A model generated the notes under the pieces. The model did not search any database. It was not told the DNA's origin and was given only the letters and a program-made list of their open reading frames with translations. The position numbers and the translations under genes are program-made. DNA of 64,000 nucleotides from Macrostomum lignano. Its lineage: Eukaryota. Shown here in pieces: positions 36,704 to 59,689 of this stretch. Where the stretch lies: positions 158,037 through 222,036 of the forward strand of contig NIVC01000501.1 in NCBI GenBank assembly GCA_002269645.1. The letters are read 5' to 3'. Positions within the stretch are counted from its first letter, which is position 1, and each line of letters starts with the position of its first letter.

Positions 36704-39700
36704 ATGGCGTCAACCCTTGACAGCATTCGCCCGCCGCCTATATTGCCTCCACTTCGGGGCATCTATGCTGGCAAATATAAGGACAGAAATCCCGATTTGA
36801 AAACTGTAAGCATTGATATCACATATTATAAAAATTATAATATTCAGCTAAACAGCACAATCATATCAAATAAACTTAATACGATTCTAGGCTGGAATAG
36901 TCAGCGATGTTGGAGGAGACACTGCAGCTACCGCTACCAAAGAAATGGAACGTGTAAGTAGCTAATTAGTAGTATATTTCGCCTAGAACTGTCTGTGTAC
37001 ATAAATATTGTTTTAAACGAAATCCACAGGCCGAGTCGCCGGAACCTACAAAAAAGTTTCACCGAACTTTTCGCTCGGAGCCCGGCGAACGAATCGTGTT
37101 TTATGGCAAAGCCAGCGATCCGCAACTGCGCTGGGCGGAGCGCATGACTCACGGAATCAAGTATCCGAAAGGGTGAGTGGCTGAGTGCTGAGCACGGAGA
37201 GATAACGTAATACACGTTGCTTTTTTTCTATCCTCTCTACCATACGCTTATTGCATCGGATTAGGTGTGACTTGGGTTAACACACCTGGTTAGACAGGAC
37301 TATCACACCTGGTTGTACAGGATTATCCACCTGATTAGACGGGATTATCCACTTGATTAGACTGGATTATCGCACCTGATTAGATAGGAATATTGCTCCT
37401 GGTTGGATGGGATTATCACACCTGGTTAGACAGGATTATCGCAAGACAGGATTATCGCACCTGGTTAGACATGATTATCGCACCTAGTTGAACAGGATTA
37501 TCGCACCTAGTTAGACATTATTATCGCACCTGATTAAACAAGATTATCGTACCCCAACTAAAACTCTGTTTCAAACTAAAACTCGCCGCAGCGAGGGCGC
37601 GGGCGGTGTCCTGAACCCGACGCCGCTAACCTTCTACCAGCAGCGATTCATGGACCGCCTTGAAGCCGCTCAGGTGAACGCCAAGAAGCGACCGCTCGGC
37701 CGGTGCCCCGACGGCCGAGAGATGGGCCTGCTGCCGCAGAATCTGGACAAAGACAACACCACGTTCGGCATCACTGTGGAAAAGAGTGAGTCAACTGTAT
37801 AAGTGTATTAACGCTCTTGGGACTAAGACTTCCACGTCATAGGGCCATGCTTCGTGAATCTCATCATATTGAAGATTAGCAATTTCCAATAATCCAGGAT
37901 TCCATACTTTCATATCTGAATAGCCCAGATTTCTTGCTACTAGATAAAAAATTCGAGATTCCCAAAGTAAATATCACAAAATCCCAAACTAAAGATCCTC
38001 AAAATCCTAAACTAAAGATCCGAAAATCCGAAAGTAAAGATCACTAAATCTCTAAGTAAAAATCCCAAATTCCAAAAGCTAAGATCCCAAAAATCCCAAA
38101 GTACAGATCCCGAAAATCCGAAAGTAAAGGTGAGAAAATTCCAAACTAAAGATCCTCAAAATCCCATACTATAAATCCTCAAAATCCCATACTATAAATC
38201 CTCAAAATCCCATACTATAAATCCTCAATATCCCATACTATAAATCCTCAAATCCCATACTATAAATCCTCAAAATCCCTTACTATAAGATCCTCAGAAT
38301 CCCAAAGTAAATATCCCAAAATCAAAAAATCCCGCCAAACCGACCCACGCGCCCAGTCGGTTCAGCTGGCGAGCTGCTCAACCCGTCTGCCACGCCAATC
38401 GAACTGGCCACGGAGGCGGCCAGCGACGCGAACACCTACCTGGTGTCGCACAAGGCCCTGCTGGCCGGAGAACAGGCCAGCCGCGGCTACAATTGGCGAC
38501 TAAAAGACGCCGGCGGCGCCAAACGCTGGGGCAAGCCGACGCCGCACGACAACACCGGGGGCGGCACGCGCAAGTGCATGAGCTGGATAGGGGACGAAGC
38601 GGCGGCCAGGCGGGAGGCTCTGGTAGACAAACGGCTGGATGATTTTCGAGAGCGAACTCAGCATCAGTTGGGCAAGAATCTGGATCCGTGAGTTCCATAT
38701 TCATAAATTGATCCCCTATTCATAAATTGAGCCCATATTCATAGATTGATCCCATATTCATAAATTCATCTCATATTCAAATGGATTTCAAATTTAGATT
38801 AAGACCAAGTACTATTCATGTCATATATCAGTATTCCATTGATCGCATATATTCATATAAATGTGCATATATTTAAATACCATTGATCGTATTGATCTGA
38901 TTATTGATCCCATTGATCATTAATCAGTATTCCATTGATCGCATATATTCATATAAATGTGCATATATTTATCCCAAAAATATTCCACAATAAATGGTTC
39001 TCTAAGTACGTCAAAAATGAACTCTACCTGCGTTTCTCTTAACTTCCCTATGTGCAGCATCAAGGACACGATGAAGGTGCCGCCGGACCACACTTTCGGC
39101 GTCCTGCACAAGCCCGATCCCTACGGAGTCGGCGACCTGTTGCACGGTCGGGCGCCCAAGCATTTCCTTCGCGGCGAGGACCGGCGCCGTGCTCTGGTCG
39201 CCGCGCTGCGCACCCAACTGAAAACTATGAACTACGAGCGCTTCAAAGATCTTGAAGACGCGTTCCGATTCTACGACAAGTCCGGCTCCGGCAAGTTGAG
39301 CGCTGACGACATTCGCGCCGCCTGCCGAGAGATGAGCGTGCCGCTGGACGACTCGCTGCTCGAACAACTTATCGACTTCTGCGACGTCAACGGCGATGGG
39401 CTAATCGACTATCAGGAGTTTGCCAACTTCCTCAACTGGAGAGATATTAGTGAGTATGATGAGGTTTTAGTATGGAAAGACTAGCAATCTGCGCCCCGGT
39501 TGAGGCCGAGGCAACAAAGAAAGAAATGGGAATTTTCGAATAAACAACATACAGGTCTTGAGCTAGTATATATTAATTGCAATCGTTGATTTCTTTGGTA
39601 TGGAATTTGACTAGCCCCCCGTCCTTAATTGGAGTGGTGATTTTAGTATAGAAGACTAGCCAACCCCCCCATTGAAGTGGTGATTTTAGTACAGAAAGAT

Positions 39701-41819
39701 TAGCCAACCTCCATTAGGGTGGTGATGTTAGTATATAAAGACTAGCCAACCCCCCCATTAGATGGGTGATTTAAGTATAGCCAACCCCCCCCCCCATTGG
39801 AGTGGGGATTTCAGTATAAAAAGACCAGCTCTTCTACCCCTCTGAAGAAGCATCCAAGAGAGAGATTCCATCATTTAAACGCGTAAAATCAGTGCCAGCC
39901 CAATTAGAAGTGTAAACTCGGCATCTTTATCACGAGCTCAGCAATAAGTAATTTTCTAATTCAATGCTCCAAGTTGGTTACTATCAGTAAAGTAGAAGCA
40001 GTCTTAAAATAAGACTTTAATTTTCGCATTAGAATGTGCATGTTTCAATATCTTGAAACAATACGTTCCTCATCCGTTTCTGCTAATTACTATGAATAGA
40101 TTAGATCTCGTCCTGGTACAGCTAGATTAGACTTATAGGGCTAGATTTGCCCGTTAAGAACACTGATCAGGTTCTATTTTGTTTGAATCGACGCAAATTG
40201 CATAGCAAATAAGCTCAAAAAGAGAACAGACAACTGCGGAAGTAATCAGCTCGATGTCAATGCAGCAATGCCTTAGAATTATTGAGTGTAGCATTTCGTG
40301 TTGCCTTTTGACAAGAGGAAACTAATTTCCCGTCAAGAGAATCCCAGGCCTCTTCGAATTGCTGTGCATTGTACACTCTACTTTAGCTGCAATTGTCACT
40401 AAGAGTAATAAACCTCTCAGAACAAAATGATTGACACACAGACACGTAGACACATTAGCCTGTTAGGTAATATTGGGTCAATGAGTCGCGGAGATATAAT
40501 TTTAGTATTCTAATTTTTGACCCACTACTGACCCACACCCAACCCTTGACCTACTCAGGCGTCCGCTCCCAGTCGGACTACGGCAAGCGAACTCTAGACA
40601 GCGAGGCGCGGCTCGCTCGCCAAATCGACGAGTCGATCTCGGCTCACAAGACTACCAACAGCATGTACTCGGCCGCTGTTGGCCGCTACGATCCAACCAG
40701 GTTTCGAACCTACGGCTGCGCCACCATCCGCTCCGACCTACCGGCCCCGGCCGTGCGCAGCGTGTCGGATCGGAGGGCCTACGGCAACGAGGGCGACGCG
40801 GCCTCCTGCCTCAATCCGAGCATCTTCACGTCGCACGGCGTGTTTGAGCACGATCTCAAAGCGCCTAGATCGGCGGAGGAGGTCCGTTTTAGCGATTGCG
40901 TTTCCCTGATTGGGCGGAATTGGATGGGGGTTGGATGGAAGAGAAAGGAGAGAAGAGAGTGGAGACAGAAAAGACAGGAGAGAGAAAAGAGAATGGAGAA
41001 GAGAGAGAAGACATGAGAGAAGAGACAGGAGAGAAGAGAGAAGAGAGAGGAGAGAGGAGAGAAAAGACAAGAGAGAAGAGAGAAGAGAGACGAGAGAAGA
41101 GACAGGAGAGAAGAGACAGGAGAGAGAAGAGAAGAGACAGGAGAGAGGAGAGAAGAGACAGGAGAGAGAAGAGAAGAGACAGGAGAGAGGAGAGAAGAGA
41201 GGAGAGACAGGAAAGAAGAGAAACGAGAGAAGAGACAGGAGAGGGGAGAGAAGAGAGAAGAGACAGGAGAGAGGAGAGAACAGAGAGGAGAGAAGAGAGA
41301 GGAGAGAAGAGAGAAGAGACAGGAGAGAAGAGACATGAGAGAAGAGACAGGAGAGAGGAGAGAAGAGACAGGAGAGAAGAGACATGAGACAGGAGATAGG
41401 AGAGAGAGAGAGAAGAGATGAGAGAAGAGAGAGAGAAGACAGGAGACAAGAGACAGGAGAGGGAGACACGAGAGAATAGAGAGGAGAGAATAGAAAAGCC
41501 TTACTCTTTACTCTTAAGAGTAATAGTTTAGGATTTCAAAACTAACTTCAAATTCGAAATTTGCTCGCAATGTGAGAAACTTTGAAGCTTTGAAGACACC
41601 TGCTAAGCATTCAGTTTCAATTTCTGCCTCTGTTTCCGCGCAACCACCTCGCAGATATCTGGCATCTTCTCGGCGGCCGGCATCAGCCTGGACGACAGTC
41701 TAGTTCGTCGAGCATTCGATTTGGCGGGCGCTGACCGGCTGGGCATTGACGAGTTCCGCAAGGTTTGGGCCCGGGCCGCGGCTGAAGATGCGGCCTCCAA
41801 CACCGAGGGCTGCTGCTGA
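36704..41819 (+). CDS. EFHB: EF-hand domain-containing family member B (CFAP21), ~570 aa, 8 exons
   Basis: Exons 36704-36805, 36891-36953, 37030-37172, 37592-37785, 38357-38687, 39058-39449, 40559-40881, 41655-41819 = 1713 nt in frame. VFYGKASDP, RPLG, DDFRERTQHQLGKNLDP, TFG...YGVGDLLH, two EF hands (FYDKSGSGKL, CDVNGDGLIDYQEFANFLNW), GCATIRSDLPAP, GVFEHD. Confidence 0.93.
37262..37550. repeat. ~23-bp minisatellite in EFHB intron 3 (CACCTGGTTAGACAGGATTATCG)
   Basis: Degenerate direct repeats. Confidence 0.85.
37950..38330. repeat. AAAATCCC-core tandem array in EFHB intron 4
   Basis: Degenerate units such as AAAATCCCATACTATAAATCCTC. Confidence 0.8.
38695..38970. repeat. ATTCATAAATTGATCCCAT-type array and local duplication in EFHB intron 5
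   Basis: Short degenerate repeats plus a duplicated ATCAGTATTCCATTGATCGCATATATTCATATAAATGTGCATATATTTA block. Confidence 0.75.
39470..39820. repeat. ~41-bp degenerate array in EFHB intron 6 (GTGGTGATTTTAGTATAGAAGACTAGCCAACCCCCCC)
   Basis: About 5 copies. Confidence 0.75.
40940..41495. repeat. Purine-rich GAGAA/GAGAG/GACAG array in EFHB intron 7
   Basis: Low-complexity tandem run. Confidence 0.92.
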
Positions 41820-42919: not shown

Positions 42920-45873
42920 TCAAATAGAATTTCTCTTCAACAGGCAAGCGTAGGCGTGCAGGCAGCGCATCACGAACAGGTAGTGCGCCTCGTTGGCCAC
43001 AGCCAGCGGGCACTGCCGCCTGAGTCCGGCCGCCAATCTGAGCAGGTCGCAGGACGCCACTCCGCCTCCGCCTCCGGCGTCCGTTAGTCGAGTCCGCTTT
43101 GCTGCCAGCAGCAGCAGCGGCAGCAAGCTCGCCTCCGAGAGTCCCCGCCCGATCGCGGCCGTTGGCGTCGCCGATGTCGTCGGCTGGTTGGCGGCGCAGG
43201 CGTGCGCAAACCGGACAAACTCGGCCGGGGAAGCTGGCGAACTGTCCGGGCTGCGGCTCAAGCCGCCGGCCAGCTGGCACACTCGGATGCGCTTGCTCAG
43301 GTTGCTGTCCAAGCAGTGCATGGTGGCCGTGGTCACCGAGTGGCAGGGGAAGCTGCTGCGCGCCCAGCCGGTCAAGTAGAACCTGGACGATGATGTCGAA
43401 GTTGTCGATCGACTTTCCAGCCAGCCGACAAAGCCCGGGTCCAGCGACACGGCGGCGCCGCCGCAAGCCCAGAGCAACTCCAGGAAGCGTTCGTTATCGT
43501 TGTCGCCGTGGCCGGAGGCGTCCGCCAGCACGAAAGAGAGCCCGGTCTGTCCAGGCTGGCTGGAGGCGTCACCGACCCAGTAGAATGCCGCCGCCGTCGC
43601 TGCTGACGCCGCATCGCTGCCACCAGCTGGCGATCCGAGCCGACTAAACTGTCGGCGAGCTTCGGCCTCGTCGACGTCGCCTACCGCGCGAAATCGCGTC
43701 ACCCGCGACGGCAGCGCACCGTTAGCTTCGTCGTCGCCTTTCATCGCTGTGAAGTCGCTATCATCGTAGTCGGGATTGTAGGCGAGATTCAGCCATCCCA
43801 TGCTGGATAGCCGCGGTCCCGCAGGCAGCGGCGGGCGGACAATCCAGCTGGCAGCCGTATGTGCTTGCATCGGCTGAAGCTCCAGCTCGACAGTCGTCTC
43901 AGACTTAGGCTGCTGCTGTTGCTGCTGTTGGTCCCTGCGCAGTTGGACCTGAGGCTCACAAGATGTGGCTCTGCCCAATATGCGACGAGTGATGAGTACA
44001 ATTAGTTTGTTTATCTTTGTTGCTTTAGCGGACTCTAGACTCCCTCCTAACTGCAATAATCCTAACTCCTCTTTTGGAACCTTTCTACTCCTCCCGGCAC
44101 CCACCTCACGCCGTAGCTTTCCACACCCTCATTCTATACTATTTCTACCCCTCCCAGCACCCACCTCACGCCGTAGCTTTCCACACCCTCATTCTATACT
44201 ATTTCTACCCCTCCCAGCACCCACCTCACGCCGTAGCTTTCCACACCCCCATTCTAAAACATTTCTACCCTCATCTTATCTTTTTTTCTCGTCACCTTAA
44301 TTTTTGCACTTTAACATTCGTTCAGACCGTTCTCACCCATCAGATGTGCACTCTTGCTGCTGCTGCTGCCGTTGCTGCTCCTTCACCCGTTGCCGCTTGA
44401 CCAGAACAACAGCCGCAAGCGCCGTGAAGGCGACGAAGGCTACAAAAACAACAGTGGATGCGATGGCTGCCATCTCGCTTCCGCGACTTGAAGCTGGAGA
44501 ATTATCGCCGGGCGAGGGACAGCTCCCGTTGCCATCGATGATACAGTCCCCTCTGGCCCAGAATGTAGCGTTGAACTTGGCGCAATCGCCTAAGCCTGGC
44601 AGACTGCTGATGCCGGTTCGAAGTCTAGCGGCTTCTTGTTGGAATGCCGCCCTGTTGGCCGGGTCGGCCAGCTCACCGGCTGGCGTGAGCAGGTCCAGTC
44701 GGACGAGGTAAACTGAGGCCTCGGTGGTGGATTCGCTGTCTGAAAAAAACGCGTTCAGAATATTGCGATTCTAGAATTAATGGCATTCTCTTTTGATGCT
44801 AAAGTATTTGTAGAGCTTTAGGGAACCTAGGAGCTATTCTAAGGGGAGGGCGATTCTCGGAAAGAGAGGTTCTCGGGTGGGGCGATTCTTGGGGAGGGCG
44901 ATTCTAATAGAGGGTGATTCTAATGGAGGGCGATTCTAATGGAGGGGGATTCTAAGGGAGGGCGATTCTAATGGAGGGCGATTCTAAAAGAAGTTGATTC
45001 TAATGGAGGGGGATTCTAAGGGAGGGCGATTCTAATGGAGGGCGATTCTAATGGAGGGGGATTCTAATGGAGGGCGATTCTAATGGAGGGCGATTCTTAT
45101 GGAGGGCGATTCTAATGGAGGGGGATTCTAATGGAGGGCGATTCTTATGGAGGGCGATTCTAATGGAGGGGGATTCTAATGGAGGGCGATTCTAATGGAG
45201 GGCGATTCTAATGGAGGGCGATTCTAATGAAGGGCGATTCTAATGGAGGGCGATTCTAATGGAGGGCGATTCTAAGGGAGGGCGATTCTAATGGAGGGCG
45301 ATTCTAATGGAGGGGGTACTATTGGAGGGCGATTTTAATGGAGGGCGATTCTAATGGAGGGGGATTCTAATGGAGGGCGATTCTAATGGAGGGGGATTCT
45401 AAGGGAGGGCAATTCTAATGGAGGGCGATTCTAATGGAGGGCGATTCTAATGGAGGGCGATTCTAATGGAGGGGGATTCTAAGGGAGGGCGGTTCGGAGG
45501 GCGAGGTGAACATGGATCACAAACACACGCAGAACAGCTATAGCCCCGGCAACAGCCCCAATCCTATACCTTTAAGAAGCCCACCGCTCGCTGCCAGACA
45601 GGCAGGGGTGCTCGGCGAACTGTTGAAGGTCTGGTCGCACGCAGCCATCTGGTGACTCAGTTCTGCCAGGCTGGAGTTCACCCGCTGCCACACCTTGGGC
45701 AGGTACTGAACAGCGAATTCGTTGCCATGCTGAGACGGGCATTCGAATAGCAATCGAATACTTCGGTCTAATACCATTCTGTGACCTGTGCCGGTTGGTC
45801 TGGCAGCCACAGAACTGGCCAACAACAGACACACGATGGTCAGTTGCTGTGAAATTGAACTATTGGCAGCCAT
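42920..45873 (-). CDS. Type I membrane protein with a degenerate cytoplasmic protein-tyrosine-phosphatase-like domain (receptor pseudophosphatase), ~585 aa, 3 exons
   Basis: Exons 45873-45570, 44739-44337, 43970-42920 = 1758 nt in frame. Signal peptide (MAANSS...LLLASSVAA), 6-Cys ectodomain, TM AIASTVVFVAFVAFTALAAVVLV followed by KRQR, then PTP-like remnants in order (YNPDYDDS, RFLELLW, SPDSSPASPAEFVRF, TAAIGR, LRRQCPLAVANEAHYLFVMRCL). The gene model is well supported; the PTP assignment is moderate. Confidence 0.72.
44085..44270. repeat. 60-bp x3 tandem repeat in intron 2 of the PTP-like gene
   Basis: CCCACCTCACGCCGTAGCTTTCCACACCC... recurs at 44101, 44161 and 44221. Confidence 0.9.
44842..45492. 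repeat. 16-bp minisatellite in intron 1 of the PTP-like gene (GGAGGGCGATTCTAAT)
   Basis: About 40 direct copies. Confidence 0.93.
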
Positions 45874-46296: not shown

Positions 46297-47295
46297 GTTG
46301 TTAGACAGGGTAGGGTGGCACCTGTTAGACAGGGTAGGGTGGCACCTGTTAGACAGGGTAAGGTGGCACCTGTTGGACAGGGTAGGGTGGCACCTGTTAG
46401 ACAGGGTAGGGTGGTACCTGTTAGACAGGGTAGGGTGGCACCTGTTAGACAGGGTAGGGTGGTACCTGTTAGACAGGGTAGGGTGGCACCTGTTAGACAG
46501 GGTAGGGTGGCACCTGTTAGACAGGGTAGGGTGGCACCTGTTAGACAGGGTAGGGTGGCACCTGTTAGACAGGGTAGGGTGGCATCTGTTAGACAGGGTA
46601 GGGTGGCACCTGTTAGACAGGGTAAGGTGGCACCTGTTGGACAGGGTAGGGTGGCACCTGTTAGACAGGGTAGGGTGGCACCTGTTAGACAGGGTAGGGT
46701 GGTACCTGTTGGACAGGGTAGGGTGGCACCTGTTAGACAGGGTAGGGTGGCACCTGTTAGACAGGGTAGGGTGGCACCTGTTAGACAGGGTAGGGTGGCA
46801 CCTGTTAGACAGGGTAGGGTGGCACCTGTTAGACAGGGTAGGGTGGCACCTGTTAGACAGGGTAGGGTGGCACCTGTTAGACAGGGTAGGGTGGCACCTG
46901 TTAGACAGGGTAGGATGGCACCTGTTAGACAGGGTAGGGTGGCATCTGTTAGACAGGGTAGGGTGGCACCTGTTAGACAGGGTAGGGTGGCACCTGTTAG
47001 ACAGGGTAGGGTGGCATCTGTTAGACAGGGTAGGGTGGCATCTGTTAGACAGGGTAGGGTGGCACCTGTTAGACAGGGTAGGGTGGCATCTGTTAGACAG
47101 GGTAGGGTGGCATCTGTTAGACAGGGTAGGGTGGCACCTGTTAGACAGGGTAGGGTGGCATCTGTTAGACAGGGTAGGGTGGCATCTGTTAGACAGGGTA
47201 GGGTGGCACCTGTTAGACAGGGTAGGGTGGCATCTGTTAGACAGGGTAGGGTGGCATCTGTTAGACAGGGTAGGGTGGCACCTGTTAGACAGGGT
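46297..47295. repeat. 24-bp G-rich minisatellite (GTTAGACAGGGTAGGGTGGCACCT), ~41 copies
   Basis: Highly homogeneous tandem array; explains ORFs 46204-47349. Confidence 0.97.
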
Positions 47296-47734: not shown

Positions 47735-48115
47735 AACAACACAAAACTACACGGCTTCAAAACTGCAAAAGCTCAAAACTACACGACTTCAAAACTGCAC
47801 GACTCCAAAACTGCACGACTTCAAAACTGCACGACTTCAAAACTGCACGACTTCAAAACTGCAAAAGCTCAAAACTACACGACTTCAAAACTGCACGACT
47901 CCAAAACTGCACGACTTCAAAACTGCACGACTTCAAAACTGCACGACTTCAAAACTGCACGACTTCAAAACTGCACGACTTCAAAACTGCACGACTTCAA
48001 AACTAAACGACTTCAAAACTAAACGACTTCAAAACTAAACGACTTAAAAACTGCAAAAGCTCAAAACTGCACGACTTCAAAACTGCACGAATTCAGAACT
48101 GCAAAAGCTCAAAGC
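47735..48115. repeat. 16-bp minisatellite (CAAAACTGCACGACTT) downstream of PPP1R16 stop
   Basis: About 22 direct copies. Confidence 0.93.
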
Positions 48116-48186: not shown

Positions 48187-59580
<11,394 letters not shown>

Positions 59581-59689
59581 AGATCTGCGGCCTTGTGTCT
59601 AGAGACCTGATCTATAGATTGTCTACGATAATCTGCAATCAATATAAAAATTATGTCTAACTGAAAGATGTCTATAGATGGTTGATATA

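What the first reader, a model, noticed from the sequence alone, without database searches (positions are those of the whole stretch)
42920..45873. Candidate novel receptor-type pseudophosphatase with a short Cys-rich ectodomain
Seen: signal peptide, ~190-aa ectodomain with six Cys and several N-x-S/T sites, one TM, a Gln-rich juxtamembrane part and a C-terminal domain with PTP landmarks in the right order. The WPD loop reads RSPD, the HCxxGxxR P-loop reads TPTAAIGR (no Cys) and the Q-loop reads VANEAHYLF. Established: loss of the P-loop Cys abolishes catalysis; such domains act as scaffolds or pTyr traps (EGG-4/5, RPTP D2 domains). Inference: an undescribed single-domain receptor pseudo-PTP, adjacent and co-oriented with the PP1 regulator PPP1R16.
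Basis: partly seen in the sequence, partly recalled or inferred. Interest (0 to 1): 0.7.

Follow-up and report, generated by a model that had tools for sequence, protein, structure and literature searches.

The report
Flatworm membrane protein with dead phosphatase relic
This is an already-annotated gene of the flatworm Macrostomum lignano for a single-pass membrane protein; the last ~105 residues of its tail are a faint, catalytically dead remnant of a tyrosine-phosphatase domain, which makes it a lineage-specific curiosity, not a new kind of receptor.

Summary
Three minus-strand exons (45873-45570, 44739-44337, 43970-42920) join through GT-AG introns into a clean 585-aa ORF. It has a signal peptide, a ~165-aa ectodomain with six Cys, one TM helix, Gln-rich stretches and a C-terminal region with PTP-like strings.

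The gene is not unannotated. The product equals GenBank PAA82040.1 (Macrostomum lignano BOX15_Mlig019222g2) minus that entry's 15 extra N-terminal residues. GenBank models for this genome come from a genome-guided transcriptome assembly. UniRef already names two sister copies 'Tyrosine-protein phosphatase domain-containing protein'.

PTP homology is real but thin:
- phmmer against PDB and against 1.84 billion representatives finds no PTP, and no Pfam hit is on record.
- Against a 19-domain PTP profile, hhalign gives P=4e-4 (0 of 300 shuffles reach the score).
- The signal sits only in aa 481-585 (alpha3 through Q-loop/alpha6; P=8e-5). The FW-motif-to-WPD stretch and the N-terminal third are not above chance.
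- There is no catalytic Cys or His, and the P-loop register is ambiguous.

AlphaFold without an alignment failed. With a PTP alignment it gave a PTP-like core, which is circular.

No orthologues were found outside M. lignano. Three near-identical syntenic copies keep the ORF intact, with pN/pS about 0.7-0.9.

Verdict: a divergent, lineage-restricted receptor-like pseudophosphatase relic. Scaffold or pTyr-trap roles are untested. Interest is low to moderate.

The parts
45570..45873 (-). Exon 1: start codon, signal-like peptide (aa 1-24 = 45802-45873) and the first part of the ectodomain (C45, C79, C92; N66, N84)
   Evidence: A GT donor follows 45570. The same exon is 99.3% identical in L001 and L002.
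44740..45569 (-). Intron 1 (830 nt), mostly a 16-bp tandem repeat x38.6 at 44880-45495. It is 2298 and 1153 nt long in the two other copies.
44337..44739 (-). Exon 2: rest of the ectodomain (C154, C167, C175; N158, N172), the TM helix aa 192-215 (44399-44470), the KRQRVK stop-transfer and the first Gln run (44354-44380)
43971..44336 (-). Intron 2 (366 nt) with a 60-bp repeat x3.2 at 44082-44270. It is 782 and 483 nt long in the other copies.
43547..43970 (-). Exon 3, first part: second Gln run, an acidic/Ala-rich juxtamembrane region (to aa 377) and an NPDY motif at 43766-43777. No detectable PTP similarity.
   Evidence: hhalign on this segment is not above shuffles (18 of 100 reach its score). 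pLDDT is below 50 even with the PTP alignment. Most differences between copies fall here.
43238..43546 (-). Exon 3, aa 378-480: the stretch that lines up collinearly with PTP motifs 4-8 (SFVLADASGHG, RFLELLW at 43469-43489, LSRSPD at 43244-43261). It is not significant on its own.
   Evidence: It is included in the full-length hhalign and MAFFT alignments. Alone it scores 10.9, and 72 of 100 shuffles do as well.
42923..43237 (-). Exon 3, aa 481-585: the recognisable PTP relic. It comprises an alpha3-like helix, a Cys-less P-loop-like TPTAAIGRG (43142-43168), alpha4/alpha5-like helices, a Q-loop-like VANEAHYLF (42974-43000) and an alpha6-like helix.
   Evidence: hhalign gives P=8.3e-5, probability 61%, with 0 of 100 shuffles reaching the score. 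Sub-segments aa 481-540 (P=0.0053) and aa 541-585 (P=3.8e-4) each hit the correct profile positions. hmmsearch aligns aa 543-579 to the Q-loop/alpha6 positions.
42920..42922 (-). Stop codon TGA

Best explanation
The locus is copy g2 of the Macrostomum lignano gene Mlig019222. It encodes a 585-aa type I membrane glycoprotein found so far only in this species.

Layout: a signal peptide; a ~165-aa ectodomain with six Cys and four N-glycosylation sequons, and no detectable relatives; one TM helix; a Gln-rich and acidic juxtamembrane region; and a C-terminal region descended from a classical protein-tyrosine-phosphatase domain.

That domain has diverged so far (12-18% identity) that only its last ~105 residues (alpha3, P-loop surroundings, alpha5, Q-loop, alpha6) are still statistically recognisable. 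The nucleophilic Cys, the preceding His, the Q-loop Gln and the pTyr-recognition loop are gone, so it cannot be a phosphatase (shown from sequence).

If the protein is functional, it most likely acts as a non-catalytic receptor or adaptor. Its cytoplasmic relic and juxtamembrane motifs would then serve as protein-binding surfaces (inferred, untested).
For: - Gene structure and identity to PAA82040.1 / PAA79041.1 / PAA82043.1.
- GenBank models for this genome derive from a genome-guided RNA-seq transcriptome assembly (PMC5730564), so the junctions have transcript support.
- UniRef names two copies 'Tyrosine-protein phosphatase domain-containing protein'. This is an independent automatic domain call.
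- My own 19-domain non-redundant PTP profile: hmmsearch 3.7 bits, E=0.0018 for one target. hhalign P=4.1e-4 over 175-246 collinear columns. In 300 composition-preserving shuffles the mean score was 14.3, sd 2.6, max 24.8, against 33.2 observed; the reversed sequence scored 12.3.
- Two non-overlapping sub-segments hit the right profile positions in the right order: P=0.0053 and P=3.8e-4, each with 0 of 100 shuffles.
- MAFFT L-INS-i independently places the same landmarks, except for the P-loop register.
- The alignment-free AlphaFold run, though low in confidence, predicts the same order of helices and strands over aa 392-584 as the alignment-based run.
- There is no Cys in either P-loop register.
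- All three genomic copies keep an intact 1758-nt ORF with identical junctions and no indels. By contrast, 1047 nt of flanks show 5-6 gap openings per pair.
- Synteny (MYPT-family gene upstream, EF-hand gene downstream) is kept in the copies.
Against: - Single-sequence searches see no PTP at all: phmmer against PDB at E<=10 and phmmer against 1.84 billion representatives.
- No Pfam hit is on record for the product.
- hhalign probability is only 35% for the whole tail and 61% for aa 481-585.
- About 60% of a normal PTP domain, including a hydrophobic beta12 strand before the P-loop, has no significant counterpart.
- The confident AlphaFold/Foldseek PTP result is circular, because the alignment consisted of PTPs.
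- pN/pS of 0.67-0.90 rests on only 3-8 synonymous differences and cannot exclude neutral drift.
- No expression pattern, orthologue or function is known.
Confidence: 0.65

Rival explanations
1. Decaying relic. The gene is a former receptor PTP drifting neutrally. It is transcribed, and its ORF is still open only because the three copies separated very recently. It has no function of its own.
For: pN/pS is 0.67-0.90 between copies. Exon divergence from copy L002 (1.37%) is close to that of the flanks (~1.5%). The catalytic machinery and most family motifs are gone. The central beta12 strand position is polar. No orthologue exists in 1.84 billion representatives.
Against: A sequence that has fallen to 12-18% identity with its family yet keeps a 585-codon ORF, a signal peptide, a TM helix and amphipathic helices has probably been evolving as a coding gene for a long time. 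There are no indels in 1758 coding nt, against 5-6 per 1047 nt in the flanks. The gene is present in the transcript-derived annotation.
Confidence: 0.15
2. Not PTP-derived. This is an orphan membrane protein whose Ala/Leu/Ser/Gly/Arg-rich tail resembles the PTP C-terminus by chance, and the reader's motifs are pattern-matching.
For: There are no PTP hits by phmmer and no Pfam hit on record. The hmmsearch score is only 3.7 bits. Two thirds of the putative domain is not above shuffles. The P-loop register is ambiguous. The alignment-free AlphaFold model gives no PTP hits.
Against: Shuffle controls give z of about 7 for the tail, and 0 of 100 shuffles reach the score for each of two independent, correctly ordered sub-segments. 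The reversed sequence scores at background. UniRef's automatic naming reached the same family independently.
Confidence: 0.15
3. Phosphotyrosine trap. The dead domain still binds pTyr substrates and sequesters them, as EGG-4/5 or substrate-trapping mutants do.
For: In the hhalign and reader register an Arg (R511) and the Gly before it occupy the positions of the P-loop GR, and an Asp (D478) aligns with the WPD Asp.
Against: No counterpart of the KNRY pTyr-recognition loop is detectable. His and Cys are absent, and hhalign needs a 5-residue deletion across 'VHCSA'. In the MAFFT/AlphaFold register the Arg position is Glu. The Q-loop Gln residues are Ala and His. R475 next to the 'WPD' varies between copies.
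Confidence: 0.05

Closest known systems
Classical (class I Cys-based) protein-tyrosine-phosphatase domain (Pfam PF00102, PROSITE PS50055), receptor-type subgroup
   Same: The architecture is type I membrane with a C-terminal PTP-like region. There is collinear profile similarity, significant over alpha3 to Q-loop/alpha6. Arg, Tyr and Phe are conserved in the (M/L)R.Q…QY.F block of the alignment (LRRQ…HYLF in the query).
   Different: There is no C(X)5R nucleophile and no His. No KNRY, DYINA or QTxxQ motif is present. The N-terminal ~60% of the domain is not recognisable. There is a single domain instead of the usual D1-D2 tandem of most receptor PTPs. The ectodomain has no FN3, Ig, MAM or CA modules and no detectable relatives.
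IA-2 / phogrin (PTPRN, PTPRN2; IDA-1 in C. elegans): single-domain receptor-type pseudophosphatases of dense-core vesicles
   Same: Single-pass membrane protein with one catalytically inactive PTP domain at the C-terminus. After the circular AlphaFold run, Foldseek lists 2i1y among many PTP hits.
   Different: From my own knowledge, IA-2 keeps the P-loop Cys and nearly all PTP motifs (it is inactive through a few substitutions), is conserved across animals, and has a RESP18-homology/SEA-like luminal part. Here the Cys is lost, identity to PTPs is 12-18%, no orthologues exist outside M. lignano, and phmmer finds no IA-2 similarity in PDB.
EGG-4/EGG-5 of C. elegans and membrane-distal D2 domains of receptor PTPs (non-catalytic PTP domains used as binding modules)
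   Same: These are PTP-fold domains that have lost catalysis and are used, or proposed to be used, for binding.
   Different: Those domains are readily detected by Pfam and retain an intact pTyr pocket architecture. EGG-4/5 are cytoplasmic. D2 domains sit behind an active D1. None of this applies here, and binding was not tested.

Membership tests
Classical PTP domain (PF00102 / PS50055) | Significant match to the family profile over the domain | tested here: inconclusive
   No Pfam hit is on record. A home-made 19-domain HMM gives 3.7 bits, E=0.0018 for one target. hhalign gives P=4.1e-4, probability 35%; aa 481-585 alone gives P=8.3e-5, probability 61%; 0 of 300 and 0 of 100 shuffles reach these scores. 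The UniRef name implies an automatic PTP-domain call, which I could not re-run.
Classical PTP domain (PF00102 / PS50055) | P-loop (V)HC(X)5R(S/T) with a nucleophilic Cys | tested here: not met
   There is no Cys or His in either alignment register: TPTA-----AIGR in hhalign; Ile at the Cys position and Glu at the Arg position in MAFFT.
Classical PTP domain (PF00102 / PS50055) | pTyr-recognition loop (KNRY) and DYINA motif in the N-terminal third | tested here: not met
   aa 294-377 is not above shuffles (18 of 100 reach its score). pLDDT is below 50 even with a PTP alignment. No such strings occur in the sequence.
Classical PTP domain (PF00102 / PS50055) | WPD loop with the general-acid Asp | tested here: inconclusive
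   hhalign aligns L…(SRS)PD to W…PD, so Pro and Asp are kept but Trp is lost, with a 3-residue insertion. The segment is not significant alone.
Classical PTP domain (PF00102 / PS50055) | Q-loop QTxxQYxF | tested here: not met
   It aligns to ANEAHYLF. Both Gln are lost; Tyr and Phe are kept.
Classical PTP domain (PF00102 / PS50055) | PTP fold | tested here: inconclusive
   Alignment-free AlphaFold gives pLDDT 34, and Foldseek finds no hit at E<=0.001. With a PTP alignment, pLDDT is 68, pTM 0.69, and all top Foldseek hits are PTPs at E~1e-7 with TM 0.47-0.58. This is circular.
Receptor-type PTP architecture | Signal peptide, ectodomain, single TM helix, cytoplasmic PTP-type domain | tested here: met
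   Hydropathy, the positive-inside KRQRVK after the TM, Cys and sequons in the N-terminal part, and the PTP-like relic at the C-terminus. No dedicated signal-peptide predictor was available.
IA-2/PTPRN family | Recognisable orthology to PTPRN/IDA-1 (conserved PTP domain that retains Cys; RESP18/SEA-like luminal domain) | tested here: not met
   phmmer against PDB (which includes 2i1y) finds no hit at E<=10. An exhaustive phmmer search finds only M. lignano self-hits. The ectodomain search finds only M. lignano.

The most novel reading that the evidence does not exclude
Mlig019222 could be the founding member of a Macrostomum-specific class of receptor-like proteins. In this reading only the C-terminal half of a PTP fold has been kept, remodelled into a new Cys-less binding module, and coupled to a novel six-Cys ectodomain and an NPxY-type sorting or docking motif. 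That would be a functional new signalling receptor built from a phosphatase relic, rather than a decaying gene.
Probability: 0.12. Interest if true: 0.5.

Novelty: new member of a known kind. Interest (0 to 1): 0.25.

Why it matters
Pseudophosphatases are a recognised but small class. A receptor-type example that has lost the Cys and most family motifs would show how far a PTP domain can erode while its gene stays open and transcribed.

In practice the gene is species-restricted, already deposited and auto-named, and has no known expression pattern or function. Its value is mainly as an annotation note and a candidate for an RNAi screen in a tractable flatworm model. It does not open a long-standing question.

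Tried and rejected
- phmmer of the full protein against PDB at E<=10: only poly-Gln and TM noise.
- Word-indexed search of the full protein: only M. lignano copies. The candidate list may have been flooded by poly-Gln words, so the ectodomain was searched alone. That again found only M. lignano. The 58%-identical P0131 is a frameshifted older model of the same gene, not a paralogue.
- Exhaustive phmmer of the C-terminal 324 aa against 1.84 billion representatives: self-hits plus one spurious bacterial adhesin.
- Single-sequence AlphaFold (pLDDT 34) and Foldseek on it: meaningless hits.
- NCBIfam scan of the tail and the ectodomain at E<=10: nothing.
- dN/dS between the three copies: too few substitutions to decide.
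- Searching papers and the supplements of three M. lignano transcriptome papers for 'Mlig019222': no occurrence.
- An IA-2 relationship was considered and rejected for lack of any specific similarity.
- Functional linkage to the neighbouring PP1 regulator was considered and set aside, because gene adjacency in an animal genome is not evidence of shared function. An operon-like transcriptional unit was not tested.
Full report
**What is there.** On the minus strand, three exons (45873-45570, 44739-44337, 43970-42920) are bounded by GT…AG and join in frame to 1758 nt, giving 585 codons and a TGA stop. The product has these parts:
- an N-terminal hydrophobic segment (aa 1-24, ending …SSVAA|RP);
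- a mature extracellular part of about 165 aa, with six Cys in two groups of three (C45/79/92 and C154/167/175) and four N-x-S/T sequons;
- one strongly hydrophobic helix (aa 192-215), followed by KRQRVK, which indicates a type I topology;
- two Gln runs;
- an acidic, Ala-rich juxtamembrane region containing an NPDY motif (aa 301-304);
- a C-terminal ~210 aa rich in Leu/Ala/Ser/Gly/Arg, holding the strings RFLELLW, LSRSPD, TPTAAIGRG and VANEAHYLF.

Both introns are filled with tandem repeats: a 16-bp unit x38.6 and a 60-bp unit x3.2.

**Identity of the locus.** The window is Macrostomum lignano DNA. The product equals GenBank PAA82040.1 (BOX15_Mlig019222g2, annotated 5'-partial) from residue 16 on. 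It is 99% identical to PAA79041.1 (g3) and differs from PAA82043.1 (g1) at 16 of 585 residues (about 97% identical). UniRef names the g3 and g1 entries 'Tyrosine-protein phosphatase domain-containing protein'. From my own knowledge, such names are assigned automatically from a PROSITE/InterPro domain match. GenBank gene models for this assembly come from a genome-guided transcriptome assembly built from RNA-seq (PMC5730564), so the exon joins have transcript support in principle, although I could not inspect the reads. No paper or held supplement mentions Mlig019222. The gene is therefore annotated and auto-named but undescribed.

**Is the C-terminus a PTP domain?**

Ordinary sequence searches say nothing:
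- phmmer against all PDB chains at E<=10 returns only poly-Gln/TM noise.
- An exhaustive phmmer of the last 324 aa against 1.84 billion representative proteins returns only M. lignano itself and one spurious bacterial adhesin.
- No Pfam family is on record for the product in either sister locus.

I therefore built a profile. Bait sequences recovered 120 real PTPs (the PTP1B bait matched real PTPN1 at 100%). Their domains were cut out and reduced to 19 sequences below 70% identity. Results against this profile:
- hmmsearch with filters off gives 3.7 bits (E=0.0018 for a single target), aligning aa 543-579 to the Q-loop/alpha6 positions.
- hhalign gives score 33.2, P=4.1e-4 and probability 35% over 175 columns, or 246 with a permissive cut-off. 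The order is FW motif, WPD, P-loop, Q-loop.
- 300 composition-preserving shuffles of the query give mean 14.3, sd 2.6, max 24.8. The reversed sequence gives 12.3.

Cutting the query into pieces shows where the signal lies:

| Segment | Result | Shuffles reaching score |
|---|---|---|
| aa 481-540 | hits profile positions 172-198, P=0.0053 | 0/100 |
| aa 541-585 | hits profile positions 227-264, P=3.8e-4 | 0/100 |
| aa 481-585 | P=8.3e-5, probability 61% | 0/100 |
| aa 378-480 | score 10.9, not distinguishable from shuffles | 72/100 |
| aa 294-377 | not distinguishable from shuffles | 18/100 |

Two independent sub-matches at the right places in the right order, plus the independent UniRef name, make homology of the C-terminal ~105 residues to the PTP family likely. 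I put it at roughly 0.8. The claim that a whole PTP domain with all landmarks is present is not supported statistically.

**Catalytic residues.** Identity to real PTP domains is 12-18%.
- hhalign keeps the GR of the P-loop in register but needs a five-residue gap exactly over 'VHCSA'.
- MAFFT, and the AlphaFold model built on it, use an ungapped register that puts Ile at the Cys position and Glu at the Arg position.
- Either way there is no nucleophilic Cys and no His.
- The Q-loop reads ANEAHY, so both Gln are lost.
- No KNRY or DYINA counterpart exists.
- The strand before the P-loop, hydrophobic in real PTPs, is TTSATPTAA here.

Loss of catalysis is therefore shown from sequence. An intact phosphotyrosine pocket is unlikely.

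**Structure prediction.**
- Without an alignment, AlphaFold gives pLDDT 34, and Foldseek finds nothing at E<=0.001.
- With an alignment of the query plus 16 PTP domains (A2), it gives mean pLDDT 68 and pTM 0.69. Confidence is 63-93 from about aa 378 to the end but below 50 for aa 294-376. Foldseek then returns only classical PTPs at E~1e-7 and TM 0.47-0.58.

The second result is circular, because the alignment consisted of PTPs. I use it only to note two things. The N-terminal third is not modelled even when the alignment pushes for it. And the order of helices and strands over aa 392-584 agrees with the alignment-free run.

**Evolutionary state.** Three genomic copies exist: the window, L001 from NIVC01000655.1 and L002 from NIVC01000500.1.
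- All have the same junctions and an intact 1758-nt ORF without indels. Intron lengths differ: 830/2298/1153 nt and 366/782/483 nt.
- The flanks show 5-6 gap openings per 1047 nt, not only in homopolymers.
- pN/pS is 0.67-0.90, but rests on only 3-8 synonymous differences. This can establish neither constraint nor neutrality.
- Synteny is kept: a MYPT-family gene upstream on the same strand, and an EFHB-like EF-hand gene and a V-ATPase C gene downstream. This fits the known large-scale duplication of this genome (PMC5730564).
- No orthologue was found in any other organism, for either the tail or the ectodomain. Transcriptomes of other Macrostomum species appear not to be in these collections.

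**Neighbour.** Minus-strand exons at 59362-59598, 58011-58310, 52126-52320 and 50530-51006 encode an RVxF-type motif (RQVRF) followed by ankyrin repeats. Joined, they match MYPT1 (1s70_B) collinearly from its KVKF motif at E=1.5e-47. From memory, the motifs fit PPP1R16 (MYPT3/TIMAP); the subtype was not tested. The adjacency claim holds but carries no functional weight.

**Conclusion.** This is a lineage-restricted receptor-like membrane protein with a strongly eroded, catalytically dead PTP relic at its C-terminus. It is a new member of the pseudophosphatase kind, already present in databases, with function unknown. A scaffold role is the most economical guess, a pTyr trap is unlikely, and a neutrally decaying relic cannot be excluded.

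Noticed in passing
window 54339-55361 (-): An intact 341-aa mariner-type transposase ORF (Mos1 3hos_A, E=3.5e-45, full length). It lies inside an intron of the upstream MYPT-family gene and may be a recently active element.
   Followed up: partly
window 50530-59598 (-): A MYPT-family PP1 regulatory subunit gene (RVxF-type RQVRF motif plus ankyrin repeats; 1s70_B, E=1.5e-47). It sits upstream of and co-oriented with the finding, and the arrangement is kept in both other genomic copies. The PPP1R16 subtype was judged from memory only.
   Followed up: partly
window 43766-43777 (-), aa 301-304: An NPDY (NPxY-type) motif in the cytoplasmic juxtamembrane region, about 85 residues after the TM helix. 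The Tyr is Phe in copy g3. It could be a sorting or PTB-docking signal, or chance.
   Followed up: no
window 44880-45495, 44082-44270, 46299-47295, 47742-48103, 48468-48870, 49442-49998, 40938-41498: Dense tandem-repeat arrays (16-bp x38.6, 60-bp x3.2, 24-bp x41.5, 16-bp x22.6, (GACA)n x102.2, 79/146-bp units, GA-rich 7/21-bp units) fill the introns and intergenic DNA around the gene. Their copy number differs between the three genomic copies and accounts for the different intron lengths.
   Followed up: partly
window ~38957-41016 (+); L001 15941-20932, L002 14490-17779: The downstream, convergently oriented neighbour is an EFHB-like EF-hand gene (Pfam DUF5580_M, EF-hand_7, EF-hand_EFHB_C on the sister loci). 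A V-ATPase subunit C gene follows. Older UniProt models (A0A1I8HQZ0, A0A1I8IVF7) fuse these neighbours with the finding into chimeric proteins.
   Followed up: partly
P0131 (UniRef A0A1I8FKS2) and P0009 (A0A1I8HL79): These older M. lignano protein models are frameshifted or truncated versions of this same gene, named 'Transmembrane protein' and 'Secreted protein'. They look like divergent paralogues in searches but are artefacts of an earlier assembly.
   Followed up: yes
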